DNA from: Mobula hypostoma
Lineage: Eukaryota
DNA: 64,000 nucleotides
NCBI RefSeq assembly: GCF_963921235.1
Contig: NC_086101.1
Coordinates: 31,744,001-31,808,000, forward strand
Direction of reading: 5' to 3'
Positions 4,990-64,000 of the stretch are shown piece by piece. The position numbers and the translations under genes are program-made. Each line of letters starts with the position of its first letter. Position 1 is the stretch's first letter. The notes beneath the pieces were generated by a model. That model was not told the DNA's origin. It searched no databases and saw only the letters and a program-made list of their open reading frames with translations.

Positions 4990-5905
4990 CTCGAGAAGAT
5001 GTCTCCGCTGGCGGAGGGACGCCCCCACCCCCCTGTCCTGTCTTATCGGAGGTCGGTGTGACTCAGGTGTGTGGAGGACTCGGGCTGGGCTCACCTCCAC
5101 TCATTCGGAGTTATGAATCCCACAGAATTTGTTCCATACCTCAACGCCACTTCCAGTGTCATTCAGAGATGCGGGTAGGAAATGACTGTATGGGTTGCTA
5201 CCCCATACCCTCTAATTCCTAGCCCTTGTCACCGTCCCGACACGAATGGCCGTCGGTGTTTTCCCACCTATGAACGCTAGGGTATCCAATGTAACTCTCT
5301 TTACGAAGATGTTTTTCCCTTGTACGTGTGAACTTGGGTGGAGATGGGGGCTTCTGCATTGAGCGGTGCCCTGTAGAAATTGGTGAGTTCACACGGGATC
5401 TCCCAGCCACTTGTCACTTCTATGGGCTGGAAGAGATTGTGTACCGGATGTACATGGAGTACACGAGGCTACAGTCCTATTCGCACATCTGGGGGTGGAG
5501 GGTGGGGAGAGGGGGAAGGGACTGGTCCTCGCCTTCTGGTTGCATTTTACCTCAACCCTCTTCATAGTTTGGCCATCCAGTACGGAGGTAGGCAAGGAGA
5601 GAGCGGGATATCCTGGGACTGGGAAAAACAGTAGCTATCCGTTTATCCAGGAAGCGGGCAGCGGAGGGTTCTGTCTGGGATGACAACCAGGCGATATTCC
5701 GGGAGAGTTGGGTATCGGTGCCCGGGGAACCGTGGAGAAGGAACACGCGGTGTTCACGGGTGCAATGGAGGTGTGAACGGTAAATGTCCTCAACAGGGAT
5801 TGGAACGTTTTAATTCGGATTGTGTTAATCACTGTTATTGTCTCTGTGTATGTTGTAGTACTGTAGAATGTGATTTGCAATAAATATATTTTTGTATTTT
5901 TGTCT
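4990..5905 (+). mobile_element. Tx1-clade LINE ORF2 C-terminus and 3' UTR (decayed)
   Basis: Frames give FYGLEEIVYRMYMEYTRLQ, LAFWLHFTSTLFI and EKEHAVFTGAMEV, resembling the Xenopus Tx1 ORF2 C-terminal Cys/His region; ends in AATAAATATATTTTTG. Confidence 0.65.
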
Positions 5906-6317
5906 TTTGTAACCTGTACACGGACATGCAAAAAAATTACCGTCCCTCTACACTGTTCGGGGGGGGGGAACATATCCTAAAGGAAACATATCAAACATCC
6001 CTCGCCTTTAAACCCCAGTAAGGAACTGTCTGAACTGTGCAATCCAGCTGCTGTTCTGAGAATGCAGACCACACTCCCTCCCTCACTGGCCAGTATGTCC
6101 CCCACCCCTTCCACCGCAGTGTCTGATCTCTTCCTACTGGACTGAGACTCCGGTTTCGGGGCACACACTGCACCAGCCGTGTTCAGGACCTCCAAGTCTG
6201 TGTGATCACCTTAGTGGTCCTGTACACCGACCTCGACCACTGCCTCAATTATCACACGTTACTATTTCGTCTGTCTGGCTCCGACCTGGATATTAGTGCG
6301 TGGGCTGAACCCATCAC

Positions 6318-7620
6318 TCGGTTCGCCACATGGATTTGTGAAAGGAAAATCATGTCTGACGAATATCATAGAATTTTTTGAGGATGTAACTAGTAGAGTG
6401 GATAGGGGAGAACCAGTGGATGTGGTATATTTGGATTTTCAGAAGGCTTTTGACAAGGTCCCACACAGGAGATTAGTGTGCAAACTTAAAGCACACGGTA
6501 TTGGGGGGTAAGGTATTGATGTGGATAGAGAATTGGTTGGCAGACAGGAAGCAAAGAGTGGGAATAAACAGGACCTTTTCAGAATGGCAGGCGGTGACTA
6601 GTGGGGTACTGCAAGGCTCAATGCTGGGATCCCAGTTGTTTACAAAATATATTAATGACTTAGATGAGGGAATTAAATGCAGCATCTCCAAGTTTGCGGA
6701 TGACACGAAGCTGGGCGGCAGTGTTAGCTGTGAGGAGGATGCTAAGAGGATGCAGGGTGACTTGGATAGGTTAAGTGACTGGGAAAATTCATGGCAGATG
6801 CAATTTAATGTGGATAAAAGTGAGGTTATCCACTTTGGTGGCAAAAACAGGAAAACAGATTATTATCTGAATGGTGGCCAATTAGGAAAAGGGGAGGTGC
6901 AATGAGACCTGGGTGTCATTATACACCAGTCATTGAAAGTGGGCATGCAGGTACAGCAGGCGGTGAAAAAGGCGAATGGTATGCTGGCATTCATAGCAAG
7001 AGGATTCGAGTTCAGGGGCAGGGAGGTACTACTGCAGTTGTACAAGGCCTTGGTGAGACCACACCTGGAGTATTGTGTGCAGTTTTGGTCCCCTAATCTG
7101 AGGAAAGACATTCTTGCCATAGAGGGAGTACAAAGAAGGTTCACCAGATTGATTCCTGGGATGGCAGGACTTTCATATGATGAAAGACTGGATGGACTAG
7201 GCTTATACTCGCTGGAATTTAGAAGATTGAGGGGGGATCTGATTGAAACGTATAAAATTCTAAAGGGATTGGACAGGCTAGATGCAGGAAGATTGTTCCC
7301 GATGTTGGGGAAGTCCAGAACGAGGGGTCACAGTTTAAGGATAAAGGGGGAATCTTTTAGGATCGAGATGAGGAAAAACTTCTTCACACAGAGAGTGGTG
7401 AATCTGTGGAATTCTCTGCCACAGGAAACAGTTGAGGCCAGTTCATTGGCTATAATTAAGAGGGAGTTAGATATGGCCCTTGTGGCTAAAGGGATTGGGG
7501 TATGGAGAGAAGGCTGGTACAGGGTTCTGAGTTGGATGATCAGCCATGATCATACTGAATGGCGGTGCAGGCTCGAAAGGCCGAATGGCCTACTCCTGTA
7601 CCTATTTTCTATGTTTCTAT
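6318..7620 (+). mobile_element. CR1 LINE, 5'-truncated, frameshifted ORF2 (RT and C-terminus)
   Basis: HGFVKGKSCLTN, YLDFQKAFDKVPH, QGSMLG, KFADD and RTRGHSLRI motifs in ORFs 6296-6511, 6501-6905 and 6933-7838. Confidence 0.95.
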
Positions 7621-11539: not shown

Positions 11540-12612
11540 TGGATGTGGCTTTCCTTTCCAGGACATTTGAAATGCCCTTCTTCTTCAAAGAATGGGATCT
11601 CTGTCCCTCCACTATTGATACTGCGCTCACCTGCATCTCAGTATTTCCTGAAAATCTGCACTCACCCCATCTTCCCACCACCTTAACAGTGATAGAGTTC
11701 CCCTTGTCCTTACCTACCATCCCATGAGCCACCACATCCAACACATCATCATCCACAACTCCTGCCATCTCCAAAGGGATCTTACCACTGAACTCCACCC
11801 CCTTCCTGCATTCTATAGGGATCACTCCCGATGCAATTCTCTTTTTCATTCATCCCTCCCTCCCAGCACTTAACCCTGCATATGGCCAAAGTGCTACACC
11901 TGCCCAATCACCTCCTCCCTCACCTCCATTCAAAGCCCCGAACAGTCCTTCCAGGTGAAGCAATATTTCACCTGTGAATCCGCGGGAGACATCCATTATG
12001 TCTGATGCACCTGATGTGGCCTGCTCTGCATTGGTGAGACATGACATAAATTGGGGGACTGCTTCATCAAGCACCATATCCCACAAGTGTAATTTCCTGG
12101 TGGCCAAGCAATTTAATTCCAATTCTATTTTCCGTTCCAACATGTCAGTCCATGGCCTCCTCTTTTGCCAAAATAAGGCCACCCTCAGGGTGGAGGAGCA
12201 ACAACTTATATTCCGTCTGGGTAGCCTCCAATCTGATGGCATGAATATCGATTTCTCCTTCCAGTTAAAAAAAAATCCACCTCTCCTGTTCCTCTATTCC
12301 ACACTCTGGCCTTTTACCCCTTCTCTCCTTCCTATTACTTCCCCCTGGGTCCCCTCCTCCTTCCCTTTCTCCTACGGTCCTCTCTCCTCTCCTATCAGAG
12401 CCCTTCTTCACCAGCCCTTCACCTTTTCCACCCACCTGGCTTCACCTATCACCTTCCAGCTAGCCTCCTCCCCATCCTCCCACCTTTTTATTCTGACATC
12501 TTCCGCCTTCCTTCTCAGTCCTGAAGAAGGGTCTTGGCCTGAAATGTCGACTGTTATTCATTTCCATAAATGCTACCGGACTTGCTGAATTCCCTCAGCA
12601 TTTTGTGTGTGT
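11540..12612 (+). mobile_element. Penelope-like element 3' fragment (linker, GIY-YIG endonuclease end, tail)
   Basis: VAKQFNS...SVHGLL...LRVEEQQLIFRLGSLQSDGMNIDFS typical of vertebrate PLE endonuclease C-termini, then a pyrimidine-rich tail. Confidence 0.85.
12516..12553 (+). ncRNA. Minimal type I hammerhead ribozyme motif in PLE tail
   Basis: CAGTC-CTGAAGA-(stem II AGG..CCT)-GAAA-TGTC-GACTG: stem I is perfectly paired, core CUGANGA/GAAA/GUC is present. Confidence 0.6.
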
Positions 12613-34090: not shown

Positions 34091-34734
34091 ATCTATTTAA
34101 GAAAGGCAACAGGGAGCGAACAGCTGCAGAGCTTTACATCTGTGTAGGAACATTCTTAGATCATAGGCAAAGGAGCAGAATTAGGCCATTTGACCCATTC
34201 AGTACTTCCTGCCATTCCATCACGGCTGATTTATTATCCCACTCAACCCCATTCTCCCACCTTCTCTCCATAACCTTTGGTTTCCTGACTAATCAAGAAC
34301 CTATCGAACTCCATTTTAATTAAATCCCAGGATCAGAATCAAGCTTCATATCACTGACTTATGTTGTGAAATTCCTTGTTTTATCACAGCATTACATTGC
34401 AATACATAATAATAAAAAACTATACATTACAGACAGATGTATATATAGAAAATTTTAAAAAATTTAAAAAGTTGTCCAAAAGAGAGGAAAAATACTAATG
34501 TAGTGTACATGGGTTCATTGCCCGTACAAAACCCTTATGGCGGAGGGGATGAAGCTGTTCCTGAAATGTTGAGTGTGTTTCTTCAGGCTCCTGAGCCTTC
34601 TCTTTCTTAGTAGCAATGACTTGACCTGCAAAAACATCCTTGGCAACGAATTCTGCAGTCAGCTTCCTTTGGCTAAAGAAATTCTTCCTCATCTCTGTTC
34701 TAAATGGTCCTGCCCCCTGGCCCTGCATGCCTCT

Positions 34735-37700
34735 GTCACTTCACTCCACTTCACTCCACTCCCCGTCACTTCACTCCACCTCACTCCCCTCCCTGTCACT
34801 TCACTCCACTTCACTCCCCTCCCTGTCACTACACTCCACCTCACTCCCTTCCCCGTCACTTCACTCCACCTCACTCCCATTCCCGTCCCTTCACTCCACC
34901 TCACTCCCCTCCCCGTCACTTCACTCCCCTCCCCCCCTCCCGTCACTTCACTCCACTACACTCCCCCGTCCCTTTACTCCACTACACTCCTATTCCCCGT
35001 CACTTCACTCCACCTCACTCCCCTCCCCGTCCCTTCACTCCACTACACTCCTATTCCCCATCCCTTCACTCCACCTCACTCCCCTCCCCGTCACTTCACT
35101 CCACCTCACTCCACTCCCCGTCCCTTCACTCCACTACACTCCTATTCCCCATCCCTTCACTCCACCTCACTCCCCTCCCCGTCACTTCACTCCACCTCAC
35201 TCCCCTCCCTGTCACTTCACTCCACTACACTCCCCTCCCCATCCCTTCACTCCACTATACTCCCATTCCCGTCACTTCACTCCACCTCACTCCCCTCCCC
35301 ATCACTTCACTCCACTACACTCCCCTTCCCGTCCCTTCACTCCACTACACTCCCCTCCCCGTCCCTTCACTCCACCTCACTCCCCTCCCCGTCCCTTCAC
35401 TCCACCTCACTCCCCTCCCCGTCACTTCACTCCACCTCACTCCCCTCCCTGTCACTTCACTCCACTACACTCCCCTCCCCATCCCTTCACTCCACTATAC
35501 TCCCATTCCCGTCACTTCACTCCACCTCACTCCCCTCCCCATCACTTCACTCCACTACACTCCCCTTCCCGTCCCTTCACTCCACTACACTCCCCTCCCC
35601 GTCCCTTCACTCCACCTCACTCCCCTCCCCGTCACTTCACTCCACCTCACTCCCCTCCCCGTCCCTTCACTCCACCTCACTCCCCTCCGTCTCTTCACTC
35701 CACCTCACTCCCCTCCCCGTCACTCCCCTCCACCTCACCCCCCGTCCCTTCACTCCACCTCACTCCCCTCCCCGTCACTTCACTCCACCTCACTCCCCTC
35801 CCCGTCCCTTCAGTCCACTTCACTCCCCTCCCCGTCCCTTCACTCCACCTCACTCCCCTCCATCTCTTCACTCCACCTCACTCCCCTCCCCGTCACTCCC
35901 CTCCACCTCACCCCCCGTCCCTTCACTCCACCTCACTCCCCTCCCCGTCACTTCACTCCACCTCACTCCCCTCCCCGTCAGTTCACTCCACTTCACTCCC
36001 CTCCCCGTCCCTTCAGTCCACTTCACTCCCCTCCCCGTCACTTCACTCCACCTCACCCCCATTCCCGTCACTTCACTCCACTACACTCCTATTCCCGTCA
36101 CTTCACTCCACCTCACTCCCCTCCCCGTCAGTTCACTCCACCTCACTCCCCTCCCCGTCACTTCACTCCACTTCACTCCCCTCCCCGTCCCTTCAGTCCA
36201 CCTCACTCCCCTCCCCGTCACTTCACTCCACCTCACTCCCCTCCCCATCACTTAACTCCACCTGACTCCCCTACCCGTCCCTTCACTCCACGACACTCCC
36301 CTCCCCGTCACTTCACTCCACCTCACTCCCATTCCCGTCACTTCACTCCACCTCACTCCCCTCCCTGTCACTTCACTCCACCTCACTCCCCTCCCCGTCA
36401 CTCCCCTCCACCTCACCCCCCGTCCCTTCACTCCACCTCACTCCCCTCCCTGTCACTTCACTCCACCTCACTCCCCCGTCACTTCACTCCACCTCACTCC
36501 CCTCCCTGTCACTTCACTCCACCTCACTCCCCTCCCTGTCACTTCACTCCACCTCACTCCCCTCCCCGTCACTCCCCTCCACCTCACTCCCCCGTCACTT
36601 CACTCCACCTCACTCCCCTCCCCGTCACTTCACTCCACCTCACTCCCCTCCCTGTCACTTCACTCCACCTCACTCCCCTCCCCGTCACTTCACTCCACTA
36701 CACTCCTATTCCCGTCACTTCACTCCAACTCACTCCCCTCCCTGTCCCTTCACTCCACCTCACTCCCCTCCCCGTCACTTCACTCCACCTCACTCCCCTC
36801 CCCGTCACTTCACTCCACCTCACCCCCATTCCCGTCACTTCACTCCACTACACTCCTATTCCCGTCACTTCACTCCACTTCACTCCCCTCCCCGTCCTTC
36901 ACTCCACCTCACTCCCCTCCCCGTCACTTCACTCCACTACACTCCTATTCCCGTCAGTTCACTCCACCTCACTCCCCTCCCCGTCACTTCACTCCACTTC
37001 ACTCCCCTCCCCGTCCTTCACTCCACCTCACTCCCCTCCCCGTCACTTCACTCCACTACACTCCTATTCCCGTCAGTTCACTCCACCTCACTCCCCTCCC
37101 CGTCACTTCACTCCACTTCACTCCCCTCCCCGTCCTTCACTCCACCTCACTCCCCTCCCCATCCCTTCACTCCACTACACTCCTATTCCCGTCAGTTCAC
37201 TCCACCTCACTCCCCTCCCCGTCACTTCACTCCACTTCACTCCCCTCCCCGTCCCTTCAGTCCACCTCACTCCCCTCCCCGTCACTTCACTCCACCTCAC
37301 TCCCCTCCCCGTCCCTTCACTCCACTTCACTCCCCTCCCCGTCCCTTCAGTCCACCTCACTCCCCTCCCCGTCACTTCACTCCACCTCACTCCCCTCCCC
37401 GTCACTTCACTCCACCTCACTCCCCTCCCCGTCACTCCCCTCCACCTCACCCCCCCGTCCCTTCACTCCACCACCCTCCCCTCCCCGTCACTTCACTCCA
37501 CCTCACTCCCCTCCCCGTCACTTCACTCCACCTCTCTCCCCTCCCCGTCACTTCACTCCACTCCACTACACTCCTATCCCCGTCAATTCACTCCACTACA
37601 CTCCCCCGTCCCTTCACTCCACCTCACTCCCCTCCCCGTCACTTCACTCCACTACACTCCCCTCCCCATCCCTTCACTCCACCTCACTCCCCTCCCCGTC

Positions 37701-39857
37701 ACTTCACTCCCCTCCCCCTCCCCGTCCCTTCACTCCACTACACTCCTATTCCCCGTCCCTTCACTCCACCTCACTCCCCTCCCCGTCACTTCACTCCACC
37801 TCACTCCCCTCCCCGTCACTTCACTCCACCTCACTCCCATTCCCATCCCTTCACTCCACCTCACTCCCCTTCCCGTCCCTTCACTCCACCTCACTCCCCT
37901 CCCCGTCCCTTCACTCCACCTCACTCCCCTCCGTCTCTTCACTCCACCTCACTCCCCTCCCCGTCACTTCACTCCACCTCACTCCCATTCCCATCCCTTC
38001 ACTCCACCTCACTCCCCTTCCCGTCCCTTCACTCCACCTCACTCCCCTCCCCGTCCCTTCACTCCACCTCACTCCCCTCCGTCTCTTCACTCCACCTCAC
38101 TCCCATTCCCGTCACTTCACTCCACCTCACTCCCCTCCCCGTCACTTCACTCCACTACACTCCTATTCCCGTCACTTCACTCCACCTCACTCCCCTCCCC
38201 GTCACTTCACTCCACTTCACTCCCCTCCCCGTCCCTTCAGTCCACCTCACTCCCCTCCCCGTCACTTCACTCCACCTCACTCCCCTCCCCATCACTTCAC
38301 TCCACCTGACTCCCCTACCCGTCCCTTCACTCCACGACACTCCCCTCCCCGTCACTTCACTCCACCTCACTCCCATTCCCGTCACTTCACTCCACCTCAC
38401 TCCCCTCCGTCTCTTCACTCCACCTCACTCCCATTCCCGTCACTTCACTCCACCTCACTCCCCTCCCCATCACTTCACTCCACCTGACTCCCCTACCCGT
38501 CCCTTCACTCCACCTCACTCCCCTCCCTGTCACTTCACTCCACCTCACTCCCCCCGTCACTTCACTCCACCTCACTCCCCTCCCTGTCACTTCACTCCAC
38601 CTCACTCCCCTCCCCGTCACTTCACTCCACCTCACTCCCCTCCCTGTCACTTCACTCCACCTCACTCCCCTCCCCGTCACTTCACTCCACTACACTCCTA
38701 TTCCCGTCACTTCAGTCCAACTCACTCCCCTCCCCGTCCCTTCACTCCACCTCACTCCCCTCCCCGTCCCTTCACTCCACCTCACTCCCCTCCCCGTCAC
38801 TTCACTCCACCTCACCCCCATTCCCGTCACTTCACTCCACTACACTCCTATTCCCGTCACTTCACTCCACCTCACTCCCCTCCCCGTCACTTCACTCCAC
38901 TTCACTCCCCTCCCCGTCCCTTCAGTCCACCTCACTCCCCTCCCCGTCACTTCACTCCACCTCACTCCCCTCCCCGTCCCTTCACTCCACTTCACTCCCC
39001 TCCCCGTCCCTTCAGTCCACCTCACTCCCCTCCCCGTCACTTCACTCCACCTCACTCCCCTCCCCGTCACTTCACTCCACCTCACTCCCATTCCCCGTCA
39101 CTTCACTCCACCTCACTCCCCTCCCCGTCACTCCCCTCCACCTCACCCCCCCGTCCCTTCACTCCACCTCACTCCCCTCCCCGTCACTTCACTCCACCTC
39201 ACTCCCCTCCCCGTCACTTCACTCCACCTCTCTCCCCTCCCCGTCACTTCACTCCACTCCACTACACTCCTATCCCCGTCAATTCACTCCACTACACTCC
39301 CCTGTCCCTTCACTCCACCTCACTCCCCTCCCCGTCACTTCACTCCACCTCACTCCCCTCCCCGTCACTTCACTCCACTACACTCCCCCGTCCCTTCACT
39401 CCACCTCACTCCCCTCCCCGTCACTTCACTCCACCTCACTCCCCTCCTCGTCCTTTCACTCCACCTCACTCTCCTCCCCGTCACTTCACTGCACCTCACT
39501 CCCCTCCCCGTCACTTCACTCCACCTCACTCCCCTCCCCGTCACTTCACTCCACTACACTCCTATTCCCGTCACTTCACTCCACCTCACTCCCCTCCCCG
39601 TCACTTCACTCCACCTCACTCCCCTCCCCGTCCCTTCACTCCACCTCACTCCCCTCCCCGTCTCTTCACTCCACCTCACTCCCCTCCCCGTCACTTCACT
39701 CCACTACACTCCCCTCCCCATCCCTTCACTCCACTACACTCTTATTCCCCGTCCCTTCACTCCACCTCACTCCCCTCCCCGTCCCTTCACTCCACCTCAC
39801 TCCCATTCCTGTCCCTTCACTCCACCTCACTCCCGTTCCCCGTCACTTCATTCCACT
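34735..39857. repeat. 30-bp satellite/minisatellite array (about 170 units), consensus CACTCCACCTCACTCCCCTCCCCGTCACTT
   Basis: Direct reading; the long P/S/T/H/L ORFs over it are artefacts of a stop-free 30-mer. Confidence 0.98.
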
Positions 39858-46034: not shown

Positions 46035-46108
46035 GGCACCATGGCTTAGTTGGTTAAAGCGCCTGTCTAGTAAACAGGAGATCCTGAGTTCAAGTCTCAG
46101 TGGTGCCT
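46035..46108 (+). tRNA. tRNA-Thr (anticodon AGT)
   Basis: GGCACCATGGCTTAGTTGGTTAAAGCGCCTGTCTAGTAAACAGGAGATCCTGAGTTCAAGTCTCAGTGGTGCCT; 74 nt; all stems pair (GGCACCA/TGGTGCC, CTGAG/CTCAG); A and B boxes intact. Confidence 0.9.
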
Positions 46109-50309: not shown

Positions 50310-51447
50310 AGCTTTGTTGAAGATACTGAATCATGAGCTCTGGAATCTGGGCCTTAGCACTCAGATCTGCAGCTGGATCTTCAACTTCCTCACAAACAGG
50401 ACCCAGGCTGTAAAAATAGGGGACAAGCTCTCCTCTACAATCACTCTGAGCACCGGTGCCCCACAAGGCTGTGTACTCAGCCCCCTGCTGTACTCACTGT
50501 ACATCCATGATTGTGTAGCCAAGTTTCCATCAAACTCAATATATAAGTTTGCTGATGATACCACAGCTGTAGGCCGTATCTCGGGTAATAATAAGTTTGA
50601 GTACAGAGAGGAAATTAAGAACCTGGTGGCATGGTGCAAAGACAATAACCTATCCTTCAACGTCAGCAAGACGAAGGAATTGGTTGTTGACTTCAGAAGG
50701 AGTAGTGGACCGCACGACCCCACTTACATCGGTGGTGCGCAAGTGGAACAGGTCAAAAGCTTTAAGTTCCTTGGGGTCAATATCACAAATGACCTGACTT
50801 GGTCCAACCAAACAGAGTCCACTGCCAAGAAGGCCCACCAGTGCCTTTACTTCCTGAGAAAACTAAAGAAATTTGGCCTATCCCCTAAAACCCTCACTAA
50901 TTTTTATAGATGCACTGTAGAAAGCATTCTTCTCAGGTGCATCACAACCTGGTATGGAAGTTGTCCTGTCCAGGATCGGAAGAAGCTGCAGAAGATCGTG
51001 AACACGATGCAGCACATCACACAAACCAATCTTCCATCCTTGGACTCACTTTACACCGCACGTTGTCGGAGCAGTGCTGCCAGGATAATCAAGAACATGA
51101 CCCACCCAGCCAACACACTTTTCATCCCTCTTCCCTGCGGGAGAAGGCTCAGGAGTTTGAAGACTAGTATGGCCAGATTTGGGAACAGCTTCTTTCCAAC
51201 TGTGATAAGACTGCTGAACGGATCCTGACCCGGATCTGGGCCGTACCCTCCAAATATCCGGACCTGCCTCTCGGTTTTTTTGCACTACCTTACTTTCCCT
51301 TTTCTATTTTCTATTTATGATTTACAATTTAAATTTTTAATATTTACTATGGATTTGTACTCCAGGGAGCGCGAAGTGCAGAAACAAATATCGCTGTGAT
51401 GATTGTACACTCTAGTATCAATTGTTTGGCGACAATAAAGTATAAAG
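50310..51447 (+). mobile_element. Rex1/Babar LINE, 5'-truncated, young (304-aa open RT C-half)
   Basis: [24 protein letters not shown]; tail near-identical to those at 13.0 kb and 21.9 kb. Confidence 0.93.
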
Positions 51448-52369: not shown

Positions 52370-54290
52370 CTTCAGTCTGCGAGAACTTCTCGGGAGGACG
52401 CGCGACACGCCCTTTTCGGGAGGAAACGCGCCACAGGCTCTTTCATCTTTCTCCACGCATTCTTCGCAGACCCACCGTCCACAACGAGGTGAGCTAGCCA
52501 TCCCGCGGGCTGCCGGTTGTGGGAGTGATGCGCCGGGTATGCAAGAAGGATTTCACTTGGGGGGTGAGGAGCTCTCATCGGCAGCCAGGCGAGGTCCTGG
52601 TGCCTGTTGGTGAGGCCTGGCGATGAGTCATTCCGCCAGACAGTCTGTTCGGGAGAACCCTGCCCTACAGTGTCCATGCAGTTGTCCTACAGTTTCGGCA
52701 GGACGTTCCGTGATGACCATTGTATGATGGGCTTCTGGTCAAAGTGTATTGGTCTGGAAGAAAATTTCAGCGTAGGACAGGTGGTGCATCATCGTCCAGC
52801 TGACTGGGATGTTGCGCGACAACGGGACCAAAACCATCATCCTTCGCAAAACCGGTGACTGGTAGAGACTCGGCAGGCCGTGACACTTAGTGCCCGTGTA
52901 TTCAAATTCCACGCACAGCCTGAGGCCACCACACACATCAAAGTGTGGGCAACATCGGGTATTTTTTGTCCTCATTGTCTAGGGATATGCATTGCGGCCC
53001 GCCTGTCTATCCCATCTTGAATCACTGGATGAAACTGAAGACAGTTCGTGTCTTTCCCAAGCTGGAGGATTGGGGAATGGGGCACACCTGCGCCAAGCAC
53101 AGCAGCTCTGAGAGCACCTCACACCCGAGGAATAGGTTCTTCCCGGTTATGGATAGAGAGCGCCCTCCCCACAGTCCAAATTTCGGTTTTACCTGCCCAG
53201 TGCACTCCAGCCAATTCTTGTTGCACGCCTCGGCCACTGCGAAAACCATACCAAGCACCTTCAGGTAACCGGAGCTGCTGGTGAATGGGGACACTGGATC
53301 GGTCAGGTCATTAGACGAAGACCACGCGGTTAACCCTGGCCCTTGATGCCAACTCATACTGGGATCAATCTGGGAACTGGCCGGATCTGAACAGAAAATG
53401 ATTAAGCTGTCCATGTAGAGGGAGGTTTTCACTTGAGTCCTTCCACTGATCGGCAGCGTCACCGCTCCTACGCTCTCGTCCTCCGTGACAGCCTCGGCGA
53501 ATCGTTCTGTACAGCACACAGACAAGACGGGGATTGGGTAACCCTGCCTGACTCCAGACTTGATGGAGAAGCTATTTATTCCCTGCCCATTGCTTTGGAC
53601 TGGGCTACAGATGTCTGTGTTGAGCAATTGGATCCAGTTCCTGATTTCCTCCCCAGATCCCATTTTGGAGTGTGCGTCCATCACGTCATAGTCATACTTT
53701 AATGATCCCGGGGGAAATTGGTTTTCGTTACAGTTGCACCATTAATAATAAATAGTAATAAAACCATAAATAGTTAAATAGTAATACGTAAATTATGCCA
53801 GGAAATAAGTCCAGGACCAGCGTATTGGTGTAAGTGTGTGACATCCCGTAGAAGACTTTCTGCTGGCCCAAGCTGACCAGGCAGGCGTCCACCCCGCTGC
53901 CTTGCACGTAGGTGACGGTGACCCCCAGCAGGGCGAGGCTGCCAAAGATTTTCCGGCCAGGTACAGCACAGGTTTGTTCCGGGAGCATCACCTTTCCCAG
54001 AACAGGCTTGACTCTGTTGGCGATGGTCCTGCACAGGATCTTCGAGTCCACATTCAGGAACGAAATTGGGTCCCAATGATTGATGTCATCCCTTTCCCCT
54101 TTCTGTCTGTAGATGAGGGGTAATGGTGCCTTTCCTCGTGGGAGAGTCCTTCGGTCTGGCAGCTAAAAGCATAGTATTGTACATTTCCTGCAGGTCTGGA
54201 CCCACCCTGTCCCAGCGAGCCGATACAACTCAGCCGGTGAGCTGTCGCGTCCGGGACTTTTAAACGCATCGAAGGAACGGATTGAGCCAT
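52370..54290 (-). mobile_element. Tx1-clade LINE ORF2 remnant (RT to post-RT), decayed
   Basis: DSKILCRTIANRVK..EQTCAVPGRKI, SGVRQGYP, SLYMD, LKVLG and LTNRHQDLAWL. Confidence 0.85.
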
Positions 54291-54985: not shown

Positions 54986-55149
54986 CAGGGGAGAGCGCGA
55001 ACGCAGTCCCCCACTACCACAAATTTTGCAGTCGAGTATCCCGCATTTGGGGACATCGCAGGCGTCAGCACACCCGGAGTGCAATGGGATAGCCTCGTCC
55101 TGGAACCTCGGCCTTCCGGATCACCGACGGTTCCCTGCCAGGTAAGTAT
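54986..55149 (-). ncRNA. RNU1: U1 snRNA gene, full length (164 nt), variant stem-loop I
   Basis: ATACTTACCTG 5' end, ATTGCACTCC loop II, AATTTGTGG Sm site, terminal stem GGGGACTGCGTTCGCGCTCTCCCCTG. Confidence 0.97.
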
Positions 55150-55411: not shown

Positions 55412-56419
55412 ATTACCTCCGCCCGCGCCGCTTCATTCATCAGCTGCAGGCGTGAGACTGGTGAAGGTCCGCGGCTCCAGTCCAGTCTCGGCCTCGTCCC
55501 CTTCAACAAGGAATTTTGGGCTGTCACTATGTGCACGCAGTCTTAGTTGGCGCTCCTGGAGGACAGCTGGGGCAAAGCCGGGGGCTAGAGTATGTCGGAG
55601 TATTGAGGATTCAATGAGGGAACGGATCATTTGCATATGCCATTCTGTCAGCGGGAAGGGTTGATTTCAGGATTGAGGAATTGAAGATCAGTGACCATAA
55701 CATTACTGAATTATATATACCCCGCTTCGACTCCGTTCCGTCTAAATCTGAATAAGGACCGTGATAGGAATCAGATGTACGAGAGGGGTCAGATCGGTGC
55801 CCGGAGGGAAGGATCAGACCCTCAGACCCTGAAGCGGGTGGGAGTGGTGTAGGAAGCGCCTTCCTGAAGGCAGAGCAGTGAGTGACTGCAGAGGAAGATG
55901 TGATCGGAGCGCCACGCGGTCCTGGGCCTGGTCTGCATCAGGTCCCGGGGTGAAGTGAGGAGAATCACTTCTAGAGGATCTGTGGGTGGGAGTGGGCGAT
56001 TGACCGGGACCAGCCACACGGAAGCTTGTAACATTGAACCAGTGAGCTGCTGGTCTCCCGCTCTTGGTTGTTGCAGGAACGACCTCGCTCTCCCTCAAGT
56101 ACGAGAGAGCCTGTCTGATACCAAAATGCTGCGACCAGCTGTGGTTTTTCACGGACTCAAGGTCTCTTTGGGGGGCTTTGCTATTGATTGCATGGTGGGG
56201 GGAAAGGGTCGTTGCTTTTGCTGGTGCAAGTGGGGGGGGGAGGGTCGATGTTTCTGCTGTTGTTTTGCGTGAGAGGGCCGAGTTGTTTTTTGAGTCATCG
56301 CTCCTTGAAGATGTCCTGGATACTGCAGAGGCTAGAACCCACGATGGAGCTGACTGTTTACAATTCTCTGCACCTTACTCCGATCTAATGCTGTAGCCCC
56401 CCCCCCCCACACACACACA

Positions 56420-56780
56420 CACACCAGACGGTGATGCAGCCAGTTAGAATGCTCTCCACGGTACATCTGTAGAGACTTGCGAGTGGTTTGTTGACATATG
56501 AAATCTCCTCAAACTCCTAATGAAATACAGACGCTCTTGCCTTCTTTGTAGCTGCATCGATGTGTTGTGTCCAGGTCAGATCCTCAGAGATATTGACGCC
56601 CAGGATCTTGAAATTGTTCACTCTTTCCACCTCTGATCCCTCTATGAGGTTCTTGCTTCGACACCACTCAATTAGCTGATATATCTCACTCCTGTATGCC
56701 CTCTTGTCACCATCTGAAATACTGCCAACAAAGGTTGTGTCGACAGTAAATTTATAGATGGCATTTGAGCTGTGTCTACA
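56420..56780 (-). mobile_element. Rex1/Babar RT fragment
   Basis: YKFTVDTT...FKILGVNISEDLTW. Confidence 0.7.
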
Positions 56781-57640
56781 ACAATGCTTTTCCATTTTAC
56801 ATGCATGCTCAAAGTTTTACGTACTGTTATAGCACTGCACCCACTCACGTGGCACTAGTTTTAAATCAAACACAATAATTGAGGGCCTTCCTCTCCCTAC
56901 CGAACCCTCCCTCTCCAATAGGAGGAGAACTCTGCACCGTGGTCCTTCCCCAACGAGCCCTTGCGGAGGCTGCACCAAGCTTCAATGCGTCCCTCTGCTG
57001 TAGATGTGCTTCCGCAGACCGGGATAAGCCAGTCGGCACAGTCCTTCTTGATGTTCCTGCTCAATATGCATGTGGCAGACTATGTAACAGTTTCTTCCCC
57101 CAAGCCATCAGACTCCTCAATACCCAGAGCTTGGGCTGACACCAGCCTACTGCCCGCTACTCTGCTATTGTCTTGTTTATTATTTATTGTAATGCCTGCA
57201 CTGATTTGTTCACTTTATGCAGTCCCGGGTAGGTCTGTAGTCTAGTGTAGTTTCTGTGTTTTTTACATAGTTCCGTGTAGTTTTTGTATTGTTTCATACA
57301 AAACATACCATGGTCCTGAAAAACGTTGTCTCGTTTTTACTGTGTACTGTACCAGCAGTTATGGTCGAAATGACAATAAAAAGTGACGTGACTTGAATAA
57401 TTTTCAAGCCGACCAATGAGCGTCTTTCACCGAGTTGGTAATCCACCAGAAGCAATTTATGTTCGTCCCCGGGAACAGCCGGTAGATCCGAGTCCACCTT
57501 CACTCAGCTGCTGCTGGGATGAGATGTGCCAGAGGATCTTTCAACATTCTTCACACGCTCTTCGCAAACCCAGTCTCCAACGAAGTGAGGCACAGTCATC
57601 CCGCCGGCAGTCAGTTGTCAGAATGATGTTCCGGATATAG
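56780..57640 (-). mobile_element. Older Tx1 C-terminus and 3' UTR, split by a Rex-type tail (about 57060-57410)
   Basis: ..RDALKLGAASARARWGRTTV and NSVKDA..; 3' UTR blocks match those at 58615-58720. Confidence 0.75.
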
Positions 57641-58078
57641 AAACATAGAAAACCTACAGCACAATACAGGCCCTTCGGCCCACGAAGTTGTGCCCAACAT
57701 GTCCCTACCTTAGAAATTACTAGGCTTACCTATAGCCCTCTATTTTACTAAGCTCCATGAACCTATCTAAAAGTCTCTTAAAATATTGTATCCGCCTCCA
57801 CCACCGTTGCCGGCACTCACTACTCTCTGAGTAAAAAACTTACCCTGACATCTCCTCTGTACCTACTCCCCAGCACCTTAAACCTGTGTCCTCTTGTGGC
57901 AACCATTTCAGCCCTGGGAAAAAGCCTCTGACTATCCACATGATCAATGCCTCTCATCATCTTATACACCTCTATCAGGTCACCTCTCATCCTCCGTCGC
58001 TCCAAGGAGAAAAGGCTGAGTTCACGCAACCTATTCTCATAAGTCATGCTCCCCAATCCAGGCAACATCCTTGTAAAT
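57637..58078 (-). mobile_element. CR1 3' fragment
   Basis: LFSLERRRMRGDLIEVYK..TRGHRFKV; tail (TTCTATG)n. Confidence 0.9.
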
Positions 58079-58193: not shown

Positions 58194-58320
58194 CAGGGGA
58201 GAGCGCGAACGCAGTCCCCCACTACCACAAATTCCGCAGTCGAGTATCCCGCATTTGGGGACATCGCAGGCGCCAGCACACCCGGAGTGCAATGGGATAG
58301 CCTCGTCCTGGAACCTCGGC
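58194..58320 (-). pseudogene. RNU1: U1 snRNA 3' part (nt 38-164), interrupted in loop I
   Basis: 3 differences from 54986-55112; abuts the polyA end of a Tx1 element. Confidence 0.95.
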
Positions 58321-59430
58321 TCTTTTTTTTTTCAAAAATATGCTTTATTCAGAAATATTACAAAATAAACTTACTTACAAAAACTAATCGTTGACTCTGT
58401 CCGTATTCAATAAATAAAATTATTTACAATAAGTCATGCGTTGACTCAGTCGTTATTCGAAATAAAGATGTTTACAATAAATCATTCGTTGATTCTCAAA
58501 CCTTAGTCAAGAATAAACTTACTTACAATTTAAAAAATTACAATAAAAACCAGACGTTTATTCTCATTTCTTTACCGAAGTTCCTTTACGGTCCATACCT
58601 TTCCACGTTTCCAGCCACCCGTGTGGCACTATGTTGATTCATCTGTCCACACCGCTGATGAGGGGCATCTCCTCCCCACCCGACCCCTCCCACTCCCGCA
58701 GGTGACGAGCCCTAAACCGTGGTCCTTCCCCAACGGGCCTTCGTGCTGGCTGCTCCGAGTCTGAGTGCGTCCCTCAGCACGAATTCCTGCGGGCAAGAAT
58801 GTGCCGTCCGACAGCATTCAGTCACCGACATCTCCATGTGCTGGAAGACCACCAAGTTTCGGGCCGACCAAAGAGCGTCTTTCAGAGTTGATGATCTGCC
58901 TCCGGGAGTCCTATTCGATCCAAAGGAACGAACGGAGCCGTTCAGCTCGTCCAGGGTCAGCGGCTGATCCAGACTCTCCCGCTTGCCGTCATCTAAAACC
59001 TGCTTGATAGGCGACAGGAAGCTGCGGTGTCTATGGCCTTTCTGTCGTACAGACCGGCGCATAGCAGGACCTGCAGATCTCCTCAATATGTCGGTCTGCG
59101 AGGACGCGACTGAGCCGTCCTCTTCCATAAGGCTGTGGATCACAGACAGCGCGCGTGGGATGATGCTCCAGGAATACAGGAAGAGTTTAACTGGGAGCGT
59201 CCGTCTCGCCGCCAGTCAGGCAACGTCCTGGTCCCAGTCAGTGAGATCTGCCGGATGGTCGGCTCAGGGAACCACCCCACTGTGTGTGTAGGACACCGTC
59301 TGATGGACTTGTGGTCAGAGTTGTTGGTCCGGAAGAACTTCCACGGGAGACAGGTAGCGCGGCAAAGTCCAGTTGGGCGGGAATTTGAGCTACAACGGGG
59401 CCAGTCCCCTCCAGCAAGTCACCCAGCCGT
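58321..59430 (-). mobile_element. Tx1-derived RT-less rearranged element inserted in U1
   Basis: A10 tail, AATAAA, repeat-bearing 3' UTR; KDALWSARN...WGRTTV*, VIHSLMEEDG...LDQPLTLDEL..RTPG and WTLPRYL..KFFRTNN..VGWFPE..QDVA. Confidence 0.9.
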
Positions 59431-60134
59431 CTGTACACCAGCGTCCTAAGTTCCAGACTTAGAACGCATGGTAAGATACTTAAAGTTCAAAATAAAATTT
59501 ATACAAATTTAAGGCATATTTGTAAATATTGTTAAATTCACAAACAAGGCGATGAATAGTGCTTAATTACATTTCTTTAAAAATTGGGTGGGCGGTGGGT
59601 TTTGATGGCGATTGGGGAATGAAACGGTCGATAAGACGTACCTGAAACAGCCCTTTTAATTATTCTTTCTTCCCCCTCCCCCGCTCACTCTCTTTCTGTT
59701 TCCCGTTTGAACGAATTTTCGTCTCGGGTTCCGTTGCCGGGTCCGCACTCGGGTTACCAGATCCACTCGGGATCTTCCGCCGCCTCCCCGCTTTCCTCGG
59801 GGCGGGGCGGTACGGGGTTGGCATTCTCTTCACTCTGCTTGTTCAACCTGATCATGCTTCACCCGACCTGGTGAAGTGACTTGTCGCCCTGTTCGTCTCC
59901 ATGTTGCCCCATACACGTGGAGTTAGAACTGGGCTTGGTGTAACATTGTCACACGTACCGAGATGCATTGGAAAACTCATAGAAACTGTTCTTCAGCCTG
60001 GTGGTAGGTACGGTCAGGCAGGGTTTTGCATCATCTGCCCGATGGGAGGGGGGGGATTCTGAAATGGGTGGGGTCTTTGGCTAGTTTGGCTGCTTTACCG
60101 AGGCAGTGAGAAGTGTAGGCTGGGTCCATGGCGG

Positions 60135-60245
60135 AGTCCTGACGAAGGGTTCCGGCCCGAAACGTTGTCTGTTCTTTTCCACGGGTGCTGCGCGGCCTGC
60201 TGAGCTCCTCCAGCGTGTTGCGAGTGTTGCTTTGACCCCAGCATC
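60135..60245 (+). mobile_element. PLE tail with hammerhead core (AGTC-CTGACGA-A-GGG..CCC-GAAAC-GTT)
   Basis: Core nucleotides intact; one mismatch in stem I. Confidence 0.6.
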
Positions 60246-61404
60246 CGCAGAGTATTTTGTGTCCATGGCGGAGGGGCGCGCTTCCATGAGCAGCTGAGCA
60301 GTTTCTTCCGCGCATTCCGCTTCACTCTGCGCCCTTTACACTGGCGCGTTCTCGGCTGGCAGCCGCTCTGCTCTCTCCTCTTTATTCTTCTTTCTGCTCT
60401 GAGGGGCGAAGGATGCTGAGCGTGTCGATGGTCGCTCAGTCGCTGCGACTCCGTACGGTCTCGCTCTCTTGGTGTGACTGTCCACATTCTGCTCCTGTTT
60501 TTGTCGAGAGCCGAGTCCCCGGCTCTAGCTGAACCCCCGCCCCTCGGATCAACACTACGGACTTATCCAGGGCCGTCTGGAGTAGACTGGAATCCTCACC
60601 CTACAGGTGCGCCCACTGACTCGGATGACCACTGTGTGGGGCCTCTCTGACAACGCACCTGCGGTTCTGACAATAGCCACTAGGCGTCTCCACTGCAGAT
60701 TTTAATCAACCGATAGCGGGCTTGTGACCGGGATCCCGCCACGGATCCTGCCCGCATTCAACTCCCGGCCACAGCCTCATGCTTTTCGTCTCGGACCACC
60801 AGGCTCTCACCGTGAGCAGACAGTCTCAGCTGGCGTTCTCCGGAGCTCATAGCCAGCGTCTTAGCGTGTCACAGAGACAGGGAATTTATTTAGGGGACGG
60901 GCAATCTGCATGTGCTGTTTTGTCACAGGAATGAGTGAATTGAGGAACCGTGACCATGATATTACAAATTGATAAATCAATATGTATCCAATATGATTCA
61001 GTTCCACCTAAAGCTGAGGACTTAAAGATAAATAAAGGTTGATGCGGGACTAAGAAGTGAACACGACCATTCGCGCACTGTAATGCAGGTAGACTCACTA
61101 AGGTAGCACGCTTTATAGTAGAGTAAAAATATTATGAAAATACGTATACATTATCATACACTGCCATGGGATTCAGTATCTTGCGGGAATTAAAGGAAAA
61201 CAATGAAATACTGTACAATAAAATAAACGGAAAAAACTGCACATAAACCAAGACTGACAACCAATGTGCGAAAGAAGAGAAATTGTGCAAATGAAAAATA
61301 ATACTGAGAATATATGAAACACTCTGGTTTCCTCGACTGCGTGAATCTAGGGCAGTCAATCTCCGGCCCTGCCAAATGTGTGAGATTGAGCCGCGAGCCC
61401 ACCC

Positions 61405-61923
61405 CAAAACCCCTGTTTACGTGAATACTGTGTCATTTGCCACGAAATAACAGACAGTACTCTGCATACGATTAAAGGAATTACATTTATGAATCTTAAC
61501 TAAAGGGTTAGTAAAGAATAACAAAAGGAAAAGGGCCCATTCTAATTAAACAGTCAAATCCGCACAAGTGGGAGCTCATCTTCAACTTCTGTCACTCACG
61601 CGTTGGGCCCCCGGTCAACGCCACCTCCTGAACGTCACTCACAACCCACCTCGAACAAACGGGTCTCCCACTGGATCGTATGTTACGACCGGTTCTCCCC
61701 AGCCCCTTCTCTCTTCATCTCCTCTCGAACAGAAGCCCAGGACCAACCTTATTCTCCCTCACCAGGAAATCCTCCCGCTAATTGGATGGCACATATTCCA
61801 CATCATCCCGTATCTTCAACAGTAACCCAAACATAAGCGGAAAACACGCAGCTCGCACAGAACAGCACAAAATGAAATACGTACAGCATTACAGTAAAAA
61901 AATATATGAACCAGGACATTACA
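61405..61923. mobile_element. 5'-truncated LTR related to the 19671/46629 LTRs
   Basis: Shared aaaagggccca, ggagctcat, tggcacatattcc and aacccaaacat blocks; ends ...attaca. Confidence 0.6.
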
Positions 61924-62984
61924 TATAAGAAGTAAGAGCCCTTCAAAGAGAGGCTGTAGAATCAGTTGACAGTGAAGTTATTCACAGTGGTTCGGGGGGG
62001 AGCCTGATGGCTGGTGTCGATGATGTGCTGTTCTTTCTCCAGAATCTCTGACCACGACAGACCAGTTCTATCCTACATCTTTCCAACAACTCCGCATTGC
62101 AATGTCGGCCGACCCAAAACCTGCGGCTGAGAAACAATCCCCATCAGTGACTGGGTCAGAGCTGTACGTGCCAGGAACACTCAGCAGATCGGTCAGCATC
62201 TGCAGAAAGAGAAACAGTTGATGGTTCTGGTGCAAGACCTTTGTCAGATCGGACGCTAGTTGGAGATCCTCAATGTGTGGAAAGTTGTGGGGAGGGATGT
62301 CGTGTAAAATTGTGTTCCGTCACGGAGCGTGGTAAAACTCCTCGGGGTATATCAATATATAAATATGGCTTGGAGCAAATTGCGTTTTGAGACTCTGGGG
62401 AACCCGAACAGAGGCGGTGGATGAGCGATGATCAGATTTAAGGCCAATTGGCCTGATTCTCTACGCCTCGTATTTACAGTCCCTCCACCTCAGTCCACCC
62501 TCCTCTCTATTTTTTATTCATTTAGAACTATAACCCATCTGCCTTTACCCCCTAACTCCCTAATATTCCCCCTCCCTCCAACCCTTCCCCTCCCCTAGCT
62601 TAACCTGTCGGTAATCCTTAACCTCTCCTCAGTTCACCACTTACTTCGCCTCAACCCTCCCCTTCTCTTCTTTATACTGGAGATTTTCGCTCTTCACTCG
62701 GTCCTGATGCCGGCCTGATCCTGAAGGTCTACAAATTGCTGAACAATCACCCATTCCCCCCCCCCGCCCCCACCTGTACTGCTCAATCCGAATCCGAATC
62801 GGAATTAGAATCAAATGCAAGTTTAATATCACTGGTATATGTCATCAAATGCCTTGTTTTGCGACAGCAGTACGGTGCAATACTTTATAAAAACTATGAA
62901 TTACTTTAAAGAATACAGATTGTGGGATGATGCTGCGGATATACGGGACGGATTTGATTGGGGCAGAGTGGGATAGGGTGGGGG

Positions 62985-63205
62985 GGGGGATCTCTCGCCG
63001 CCGGCCAGGCGGAGTCTTTGCGCCTGTTGGTGAGGCGTGGGGATGAGGGATACCGCCGGATACCGCTGGGCAGTGTGCTCCGGAAACCCCTACCCCATTG
63101 TGCCCATTGAGTCGTTCTGCGGTTTCTGCAGCACATTGCGTGCTGACCTCTGCCTTCTGGTCAAAGGTGTTGGCGAGGATAGCGAACATTGTGCCAAAGA
63201 CCAAA
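62985..63205 (-). mobile_element. Old Tx1 post-RT fragment
   Basis: ANTFDQK..SARNVLQK..FPEHT..LTNRRKDSAWPAAR, homologous to 52590-52770 and 59200-59340. Confidence 0.7.
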
Positions 63206-63629
63206 AAAAAACATAGAACGCTGGGTTAATTCAGCAGGTCAGTCCGTTGACCTCAACTAGGCCTAAAAACGTCCCACTCCCCACGTGGTCAAAATAAAAC
63301 TAAATAACGTGGTCTAAAATACCCTAACCATCGAAGTGGCGCGTCTTTCATTATCTTGGTCCATGGGGAGAAAACACATGCCGGGTGATCGACCCTGGCT
63401 CGGTCGCCTGGGCGAGCGTGCCTAATGTTCGAAGACCCGAGGCTGCTACCAGGATAATGGAGCCAAGTGGTTTTGGGCCAGGTTAATGAAAGACGTGGTG
63501 CAGGTCGAAGTGCCAGGGTTAAGTGACACAGAATTGCCTGTAATTAGATCTCAGTCCGTTCTTCAGCATTTGAGAACACGAAACACAGTTTACTTCTAAA
63601 AACCACGTTCTATTTTTTGTTTACAAGGT

Positions 63630-63759
63630 CAGCGGAGAGCGCGAACGCAGTCCCCCACTACCACAAATTCCGCAGTCGAGTATCCCGCATTTGGGGACAT
63701 CGCAGGCGTCAGCACACCCGGAGTGCAATGGGATAGCCTCGTCCTGGAACCTCGGCCTT
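63630..63759 (-). pseudogene. RNU1: U1 snRNA 3' part (nt about 35/37-164), interrupted in loop I
   Basis: 3 differences from the intact copy; joined to a Tx1 polyA end. Confidence 0.95.
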
Positions 63760-64000
63760 TTTTTCCAAAAATACTTTATTCAGAAATATTACAAAATAAA
63801 AATAATTACATACAAGAAAAGAAAACCATTCGTTGACTGTAAGTCCTTATTCAATACAGTTATTAACAATAAAATTTTGCGTTGACTCTCTGTTCATTTA
63901 CAAATGAAAGATGTTTACAGTAAATCATGCGTTTACTCTCAACCCTTGGTCAAGAGTTAAAACTTATTAACAATCAAAATTTTCAACAATAAAGGCAGGC
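63758..64000 (-). mobile_element. 3' end of a second Tx1-family element inserted in U1 (continues beyond the window)
   Basis: A7 tail and AATAAA; 27-nt identity (ctttattcagaaatattacaaaataaa) with 58342-58368, then clearly diverged but homologous repeat units. Confidence 0.85.

What the first reader, a model, noticed from the sequence alone, without database searches (positions are those of the whole stretch)
58194..64000. Candidate U1-snRNA-targeting Tx1 retrotransposon: two U1 genes broken at the same loop-I site
Seen: two U1 3' halves (58194-58320, 63630-63759) each join the polyA/AATAAA end of a Tx1-type element, in the same orientation and at the same point (U1 ...GGAA|GGCCGAGG). The two U1 halves are almost identical (2 differences), their downstream flanks are unrelated, and the two elements' 3' UTRs are clearly diverged. 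That argues for independent insertions rather than one duplicated event. On the antisense strand the junction is 5'-CTCGGCCTT^CCGG, leaving a TT 3' end that could pair with the polyA tail, as expected for target-primed reverse transcription. Established: Tx1-clade elements can be sequence-specific (Keno in U2 snRNA, Mutsu in 5S rRNA genes), and Dada DNA transposons target U1. Inference: this is a U1-specific Tx1 lineage. I do not recall one described in chondrichthyans, but I could not search.
Basis: partly seen in the sequence, partly recalled or inferred. Interest (0 to 1): 0.9.

Follow-up and report, generated by a model that had tools for sequence, protein, structure and literature searches.

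The report
Keno-type LINE inserted in U1 genes
Two U1 spliceosomal RNA genes in a ray genome were each cut at the same nucleotide by separate insertions of a Keno-type (Tx1) jumping gene. This points to a U1 target not found in the searchable literature for this class of element, although the same family also lands outside U1 genes.

Summary
On the minus strand, two U1 3' parts (58194-58320 and 63630-63759) each follow directly after the AATAAA signal and polyA tail of homologous LINE 3' ends. Both joints lie at U1 nt 36/37 in loop I. The two insertions are independent. Element 2's 3' UTR is 99.2% identical to a full-length element at a different locus in Mobula hypostoma (L007), but only about 75% identical to element 1. 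The U1 parts differ at 2 bases, and the flanks are unrelated beyond a 3'-box-like motif.

The element belongs to the Keno group of the Tx1 clade. It has ORF1 with RNA-binding domains and CCHC, and ORF2 with endonuclease and reverse transcriptase. In a tree it sits among elements that I verified to lie in U2 genes.

"U1-specific" is only partly supported. The L007 copy sits outside any snRNA gene, between 6-bp target-site duplications (TSDs). It carries a compound head made of U2 nt 1-29 plus U1-like nt 30-66. Two skate relatives are also outside U1. Read depth suggests roughly 100-1000 copies of this group in the genome.

All five pieces of this group in the 64-kb window lie within 12 kb around the three U1 loci, in the same orientation as the U1 genes.

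Verdict: a real, recurrent U1 target site for a Keno-type lineage, a preference rather than exclusive specificity. The scan's own unchecked notes report similar U1 junctions elsewhere in this genome.

The parts
54986..55149 (-). Complete, uninterrupted U1 snRNA gene. It serves as the reference for the target site (nt 36/37 = GGAA|GGCC in loop I).
   Evidence: Rfam RF00003, 152.5 bits, full model. It holds the only copy of U1 nt 1-36 in the window.
58194..58320 (-). U1 3' part (nt 38-164, or nt 37-164 if G 58322 is the target's) with a 3'-box-like motif just downstream. This is the target remnant of insertion 1.
   Evidence: Rfam 81.1 bits. It is 97.6% identical to the complete U1. Alignment A1.
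58321..59428 (-). Element 1, an old, rearranged, RT-less copy. The 3' segment, matching positions 4899-5466 of the L007 reference element, lies at 58900-58324 (74.5%) and includes A10 at 58323-58332 and the AATAAA signal. The pre-RT segment (positions 2819-3073) lies at 59146-58898 (85%). A post-RT segment (about positions 4400-4685) lies at 59428-59167.
   Evidence: BLASTN against the full-length Mobula element. TBLASTN alignments. Repeat depth falls to single copy at about 59383. An in-frame 143-aa fusion ORF lies at 58712-59143.
58362..58529 (-). 48-bp tandem units (3.4 copies) inside the 3' UTR. The same UTR type occurs in element 2 and in L007.
   Evidence: Tandem Repeats Finder. Alignments.
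63630..63759 (-). U1 3' part (nt 35/37-164) followed by a 3'-box-like motif that is homologous to the complete gene's flank. This is the target remnant of insertion 2.
   Evidence: Rfam 80.6 bits. 97.7% identical to the complete U1. The homology runs 22 nt past the U1 3' end.
63758..64000 (-). Element 2, the 3' UTR and A7 tail of a young copy that runs off the window's end.
   Evidence: 99.2% identical over 243 nt to the 3' end of the full-length element in L007 (Mobula hypostoma).
52408..54288 (-). Piece A, an old 5'- and 3'-truncated copy (positions 3032 to about 4890 of the L007 reference element, covering RT and part of the C-terminal domain). It lies 700 bp downstream of the complete U1 and has a 150-bp foreign insert at 53680-53829.
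   Evidence: BLASTN at 72-80%. Weak Pfam RVT_1 hit on ORF 53025-53684 (E 0.0068, 16.6 bits, below the 29.6-bit cut-off). TBLASTN.
56893..57513 (-). Piece B, an old fragment of the ORF2 C-terminus (positions 4819-5129 of the L007 reference element) interrupted by foreign sequence.
   Evidence: BLASTN at 73-74%. Similarity to element 1.
62992..63155 (-). Piece C, an old fragment (positions 4487-4649 of the L007 reference element), 475 bp downstream of the second U1 remnant.
   Evidence: BLASTN at 74%. 69% identical to piece A.

Best explanation
Two separate target-primed reverse transcription events placed Keno-group (Tx1-clade) LINEs into two different U1 snRNA genes of one U1 cluster. Both went in the sense orientation at the same position, between U1 nt 36 and 37 in the loop of stem-loop I. 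The element's endonuclease nicks the antisense strand at 5'-CTCGGCC(TT)^CCGG-3'. The T-ended 3' OH pairs with the polyA tail and primes cDNA synthesis, so the finished insertion reads element, polyA, then U1 nt 37-164. Element 1 is an old, rearranged copy. Element 2 is a young copy of a family that is still nearly identical between loci. The lineage descends from U2-targeting Keno elements and keeps a U2 nt 1-29 head. It has a real preference for the U1 loop-I site, but it also integrates at ordinary sites with short TSDs. Shown here: the junctions, the independence of the two events, the family placement, and the copy outside any snRNA gene. Inferred: the nick position, cleavage by the element's own endonuclease, and co-transcription from the snRNA promoter.
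For: The junction is the same in both copies. Independence rests on three results: element 2's UTR is 99.2% identical to L007 but about 75% to element 1; the flanks are unrelated; and the U1 parts are about 98% alike while the adjoining UTRs are 75% alike. The targets look like real genes rather than U1 retrocopies, because a 3'-box-like motif lies 8-15 nt after each U1 end, and copy 2 shares 22 nt of flank with the complete gene at lower identity than the coding part. Family placement: L007 has ORF1 with ZCCHC3-type RNA-binding domains and CCHC, and ORF2 with Exo_endo_phos and RVT_1. In the tree, the Mobula and skate elements fall inside a clade (support 100) with P0151. P0151's contigs start with U2 nt 1-28 and end with polyA followed by TCTGTTCTTATCAG, which is the published Keno 3' target (PMC6136364). 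Local enrichment: all five pieces of this group in the 64-kb window lie within 52.4-64.0 kb around the three U1 loci, all co-oriented with U1. Group copy number is only about 100-1000, which in a genome of a few Gb would put far less than one piece in 12 kb by chance. The scan's unchecked notes list two more Tx1-U1 junctions elsewhere in this genome.
Against: Only 3' junctions are seen. No U1 nt 1-36 adjoins either element inside the window, so TSDs and 5' joints are untested. The one other copy of the young family I could fetch (L007) is not in U1. Skate relatives L008 and L009 are not in U1 either. The U1 site shows no sequence similarity to the Keno U2 site, so how one lineage would recognise it is unexplained.
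Confidence: 0.7

Rival explanations
1. The lineage is strictly U1-specific. Essentially all active copies live in U1 genes, and copies elsewhere are rare accidents.
For: Two of two 3' ends in the window are in U1 at one nucleotide. All group pieces in the window cluster around U1 genes. Unchecked scan notes report further U1 junctions.
Against: L007, 99% identical to element 2 in its UTR, lies outside snRNA genes with clean 6-bp TSDs that begin exactly at U2 nt 1 of its head. Its parent was therefore transcribed from a U2 promoter, not a U1 promoter. Depth suggests 100-190 copies' worth of 3' UTRs and about 1000 of ORF2 ends. Unchecked scan notes list several U2-headed copies away from U2.
Confidence: 0.15
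2. The U1 part is a carried tail (3' transduction or template switching). A master copy sitting in a U1 gene is transcribed through into U1 nt 37-164, and the whole unit retrotransposes. The U1 parts would then be cargo, not targets.
For: Both U1 parts share two bases that the neighbouring complete U1 lacks. The flanks become unrelated within about 25 nt. Short A-rich runs follow both U1 ends.
Against: L007 ends at its polyA with no U1 tail. The two junctions differ (A10+GA versus A7), and the UTRs are 25% diverged while the U1 parts are 98% alike. That pattern is not expected for one inherited unit. The A-rich runs fit the snRNA 3'-box consensus at the right distance, and copy 2's run aligns with the complete gene's 3' flank.
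Confidence: 0.1
3. There was one ancestral insertion, copied by tandem or segmental duplication of the U1 unit. Gene conversion then kept the U1 parts alike.
For: U1 genes are often tandemly arrayed, and the three U1 loci here are co-oriented within 9 kb.
Against: Element 2 is 99.2% identical to a copy at a different locus but only 75% to element 1. No flank homology exists between the two units. The polyA length and junction bases differ.
Confidence: 0.04

Closest known systems
Keno (Tx1 clade; U2 snRNA gene-specific non-LTR retrotransposon; Kojima and Fujiwara 2004, cited in PMC4494074, PMC4640811 and PMC6136364)
   Same: It has the same architecture: ORF1 with RNA-binding domains and CCHC, ORF2 with apurinic-like endonuclease and RT, and a polyA tail. 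It inserts in the sense orientation into an snRNA gene about 37 nt from the RNA's 5' end. The 5' end carries U2 nt 1-29, ending at the Keno 5' junction. It is nested phylogenetically among U2-verified Keno elements.
   Different: The two window copies interrupt U1 (nt 36/37, loop I), not U2 (3' target TCTGTTCTTATCAG). The family also inserts at ordinary sites with TSDs.
Tx1-Mar families and SINEU of crocodilians (Keno-group Tx1 with U1- or U2-derived 5' heads; PMC4494074)
   Same: These are Keno-group elements whose 5' ends carry snRNA-derived sequences, including stacked U1 and U2 pieces, and which sit away from snRNA genes. The L007 copy, with its U2(1-29)+U1(30-66) head, is like this.
   Different: Tx1-Mar targets a Mariner transposon. 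No U1 gene insertion is described for it. The host here is a ray, not a crocodilian.
Dada-U1 (DNA transposons inserted specifically in U1 snRNA genes of zebrafish; PMC8869645)
   Same: It uses the same target gene family and the same logic of hiding in a multicopy small RNA gene.
   Different: It is a cut-and-paste DNA transposon with 6-7 bp TSDs, and is unrelated in protein and mechanism.
Utopia (restriction-like-endonuclease non-LTR elements in U2 genes; PMC4640811)
   Same: It is an snRNA gene-targeting non-LTR retrotransposon.
   Different: It has a different endonuclease type and clade, and its target is U2.

Membership tests
Tx1 clade, Keno group | ORF2 with an apurinic-like endonuclease followed by reverse transcriptase, and a polyA tail | tested here: met
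   In the full-length L007 copy, precomputed Pfam hits are Exo_endo_phos and RVT_1. The polyA is visible. The window copies keep only RT or C-terminal fragments.
Tx1 clade, Keno group | ORF1 of the RNA-binding-domain plus CCHC zinc-knuckle type | tested here: met
   L007 ORF1 (483 aa) has RBD_ZCCHC3_1st, RBD_ZCCHC3_2nd and zf-CCHC. The U2-verified element L006 has the same.
Tx1 clade, Keno group | RT/ORF2 phylogeny groups it with Keno | tested here: met
   In the IQ-TREE run, Mobula plus skate lie in a clade (support 100) with P0151. The second U2-verified element, P0156, lies in the sister clade, and the joint node has support 93. The references were verified by their U2 flanks, not taken from Repbase, which was not available.
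Keno proper | Specific insertion in U2 snRNA genes, with 3' flank TCTGTTCTTATCAG about 37 nt into U2 | tested here: not met
   Both window copies are followed by U1 nt 37-164. L007 is followed by non-snRNA DNA. Only the U2 nt 1-29 head recalls a U2 residence.
U1-specific non-LTR family (Kojima's rule: more than 20% of flanks are one target type, PMC4494074) | A large share of independent copies flanked by U1 at one site | tested here: inconclusive
   Two of the three 3' junctions of the Mobula lineage that I examined are in U1, but the window was chosen for that reason.
U1-specific non-LTR family | 5' junction adjoining U1 nt 1-36, with or without a TSD | not testable with these tools
   Element 2's 5' end lies beyond the window. 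Element 1 has no U1 5' part upstream.

The most novel reading that the evidence does not exclude
One Keno-type lineage shuttles between U1 and U2 genes. It picks its site by position in an snRNA transcription unit (about +37 from the start in both U1 and U2) rather than by DNA sequence. The compound head U2(1-29)+U1(30-66) would then be a fossil record of serial residence. First came a stay in a U1 gene with a 30-bp TSD (nt 37-66). Next came a stay in a U2 gene, joined through the shared GATCA. Finally came escape to ordinary sites.
Probability: 0.15. Interest if true: 0.85.

Novelty: new variant of a known kind. Interest (0 to 1): 0.58.

Why it matters
Site-specific LINEs are the natural models for programmable, RNA-templated DNA insertion. 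In the papers I could search, snRNA gene targeting by non-LTR elements is reported only for U2 (Keno, Utopia) and U5 (one Tx1 family), and U1 is reported as a target only of Dada DNA transposons. A Keno-derived lineage that hits U1 loop I would show a recent target switch inside one endonuclease family. That makes the determinants of target choice testable by comparing close relatives. The U2+U1 compound head also links target-specific Keno elements to the snRNA-headed Tx1-Mar and SINEU elements, and suggests how such heads arise. For the host, the insertions inactivate copies of an essential spliceosomal RNA gene within a cluster.

Tried and rejected
I did not resend any U1 sequence.
- A word-based protein search with element 1's 143-aa ORF found nothing.
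- The closest library proteins (whale shark, EukProt) have no DNA on record.
- Basking shark and epaulette shark loci were listed but no DNA was served.
- A second Mobula look-up returned the same place without DNA.
- The skate-type Logan contig L010 stops in its polyA, so it gives no junction.
- A permissive Rfam scan of 51-64 kb found no further U1 or U2 fragments next to pieces A, B or C.
- I first read element 1 as a simple internal deletion. BLAST against the full-length element shows three non-collinear segments instead.
- The idea that the 3' UTR depth alone could settle U1 specificity was dropped, because U1 copy number could not be measured.
- A weak RT-19 hit at 53204-53293 lies inside RT-coding sequence and is taken as chance.
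Full report
**What is in the sequence.** Rfam finds three U1 matches on the minus strand. One is a complete gene at 54986-55149 (152 bits). Two are partial, at 58194-58331 and 63630-63789 (81 bits each). Aligning the three shows both partial copies are collinear with the complete gene from about nt 37 (GGCCGAGGTTCC) to nt 164. They differ from each other at two positions. Each differs from the complete gene at three positions, two of which they share. Read on the minus strand, each partial U1 follows directly after a polyA run and an AATAAA-containing 3' UTR. In copy 1 the polyA is A10, followed by GA and then GCCGAGG. In copy 2 it is A7, followed directly by GGCCGAGG. The two UTRs are homologous over about 240 bp at about 75% identity and contain 48-bp tandem units. 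The first 36 nt of U1 occur only in the complete gene, and a permissive Rfam scan of 51-64 kb adds nothing. Only the 3' junctions can therefore be seen in this window.

**Are the two junctions independent?** Self-comparison of 52-64 kb finds no shared flank between the two units. The only extra homology is 22-23 nt just after the U1 3' end, shared by copy 2 and the complete gene. The strongest evidence came from outside the window. A protein search with an RT fragment of a neighbouring piece led through a profile search to a Mobula hypostoma protein, P0182. Its locus L007 (GCA_963921235.1, OY992599.1) holds a full-length 5.5-kb element. Element 2's visible 243 nt are 99.2% identical to that element's 3' end. 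Element 1's 3' segment is only 74.5% identical. So one insertion is young and the other is old or from a diverged subfamily. A single duplicated insertion cannot give that pattern.

**Real U1 genes or carried U1 tails?** Each U1 end is followed 8-15 nt later by an A-rich motif close to the vertebrate snRNA 3'-box consensus (GTTT N0-3 AAARNNAGA, recalled from my own knowledge). Copy 2 has AAAAATAGA, copy 1 has GAAAAAAGA, and the complete gene has AAATTAGA. Copy 2's motif aligns with the complete gene's flank, but at clearly lower identity than the 98% of the coding part. That is the pattern expected of paralogous genes, not of one transduced unit. The L007 copy ends at its polyA with no U1 tail. 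I keep the carried-tail model as a minor rival, because both U1 parts share two variant bases.

**What the element is.** L007 has ORF1 (483 aa, ZCCHC3-type RNA-binding domains plus CCHC) and ORF2 (Exo_endo_phos plus RVT_1, with one frameshift). Shark relatives carry a zf-RVT C-terminal region. The nearest full-length library proteins are P0151 and P0156. Their contigs begin with U2 snRNA nt 1-28 or nt 12-31. One contig (L005) ends with polyA followed by TCTGTTCTTATCAGTTTAATA, which is exactly the published Keno 3' target (PMC6136364). They are therefore bona fide Keno elements. In a maximum-likelihood tree of 36 ORF2 proteins rooted on plant L1s, the Mobula element pairs with a skate element (support 100). 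That pair lies in a clade (support 100) with P0151. P0156 lies in the sister clade, and the joint node has support 93. The lineage is thus nested among U2-targeting Keno elements of the Tx1 clade.

**The head of the full-length copy.** L007's element begins with U2 nt 1-29, which Rfam recognises (E 9e-5). A U1-like stretch follows, matching U1 nt 28-66 at 79%. The two overlap in GATCA. The whole element, from U2 nt 1 to the polyA, is bounded by the direct repeat TAATTG and lies outside any snRNA gene. Its parent was therefore transcribed from a U2 promoter, and the copy then landed at an ordinary site. Keno-group elements with U1 or U2 heads at non-snRNA sites are already described in crocodilians as Tx1-Mar and SINEU (PMC4494074), so this part is a new member of a known kind. 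The scan's unchecked notes also report U2-headed Tx1 copies away from U2, and a U1-like hairpin at element 2's 5' end just beyond my window. The first of these agrees with L007. I could not check the second.

**How specific is the U1 targeting?**
- For it:
  - Two independent hits at one nucleotide of a 164-nt gene are essentially impossible for a random integrator.
  - All five pieces of this group in the 64-kb window lie within 12 kb around the three U1 loci. All are co-oriented with U1, and their identities to the young element range from 72% to 99%. This suggests repeated arrivals over a long time.
- Against exclusivity:
  - L007 is not in U1.
  - Two skate relatives (L008, L009) end in ordinary DNA, one with a 15-bp TSD.
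  - Summed contig depth at 80% likeness or more is about 100-190 times single copy over element 1's UTR and about 1000-1270 times over its ORF2 ends.
- Not measurable: the share of copies in U1.

My reading is a strong preference, not exclusive specificity.

**Mechanism.** What is shown: sense-orientation insertion, and a polyA joined to U1 nt 37. What is inferred: the element's endonuclease nicks the antisense strand at CTCGGCC(TT)^CCGG. The T-ended 3' OH pairs with the polyA tail and primes reverse transcription. Resident copies are transcribed from the snRNA promoter, as the U2-started head of L007 implies. Element 1 consists of three non-collinear segments of the L007 reference element (positions about 4400-4685, 2819-3073 and 4899-5466). 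Most other genomic copies do not share its internal joint (loose ends at 58884). Template jumps during a single insertion, or later rearrangement, would explain this.

**An open puzzle.** The U1 site and the Keno U2 site share no sequence, yet both lie about 37 nt from the snRNA 5' end. The head's U1 stretch (nt 30-66) spans the insertion site uninterrupted. It would be produced by a U1 insertion with a 30-bp TSD, followed by a 5'-truncated insertion into U2. This is the basis of the novel reading, and I rate it at 0.15.

**Novelty.** In the searchable literature, non-LTR elements targeting snRNA genes are Keno and Utopia for U2 (PMC4640811) and one Tx1 family for U5 (PMC4494074, Fig. 3 legend). 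U1 is listed only as a target of Dada-U1 DNA transposons (PMC4640811, PMC8869645). My searches found no U1-inserting LINE. Repbase and Dfam could not be consulted. I file this as a new variant of a known kind.

Noticed in passing
L007:8307-8375 (Mobula hypostoma OY992599.1): The full-length element's 5' end is a compound head. U2 snRNA nt 1-29 is joined through a shared GATCA to a U1-like stretch (nt 30-66) that has the canonical loop CACGAAGG. This differs from the window's own U1 genes, which have CCGGAAGG. The whole element is bounded by TAATTG direct repeats.
   Followed up: partly
window 54986-55149: The complete U1 has a non-canonical loop I (GAUCCGGAAGG instead of the usual AUCACGAAGG) and an altered stem I. 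The two interrupted U1 copies differ from it at two bases beside the Sm site (GCGGAAUUUG versus GCAAAAUUUG).
   Followed up: no
window 60091-60267: This short repeat has an enormous summed contig depth, about 6.7e5 against about 11 for single copy. That implies tens of thousands of copies, so it is probably a SINE. Other high-copy stretches lie at 61330-61860 (about 3000 times single copy) and 62746-62922 (about 1500 times).
   Followed up: no
window 34573-38309: A 1201-aa ORF overlaps 540-560-aa ORFs in the other two forward frames and has no Pfam hit. It looks like stop-free repetitive or low-complexity DNA rather than a gene.
   Followed up: no
window 46035-46108: A tRNA match on the plus strand (Rfam, 70 bits). 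I did not check whether it is a gene or a SINE head.
   Followed up: no
window 9352-11505, 6074-7496, 50314-51228, 56344-56777, 57781-58077: Many fragments of an unrelated LINE type (RVT_1, some with the ALKBH8_N-like motif) fill the window. One lies directly downstream of the first U1 remnant and another interrupts piece B.
   Followed up: no
L009:7900-8080 and 11620-11660 (Leucoraja erinacea): The skate relative sits, with a 15-bp TSD (ATGGATCTCATTTAC), inside a locally repeated unit of about 120 bp. I did not examine whether that repeat is a preferred target.
   Followed up: no
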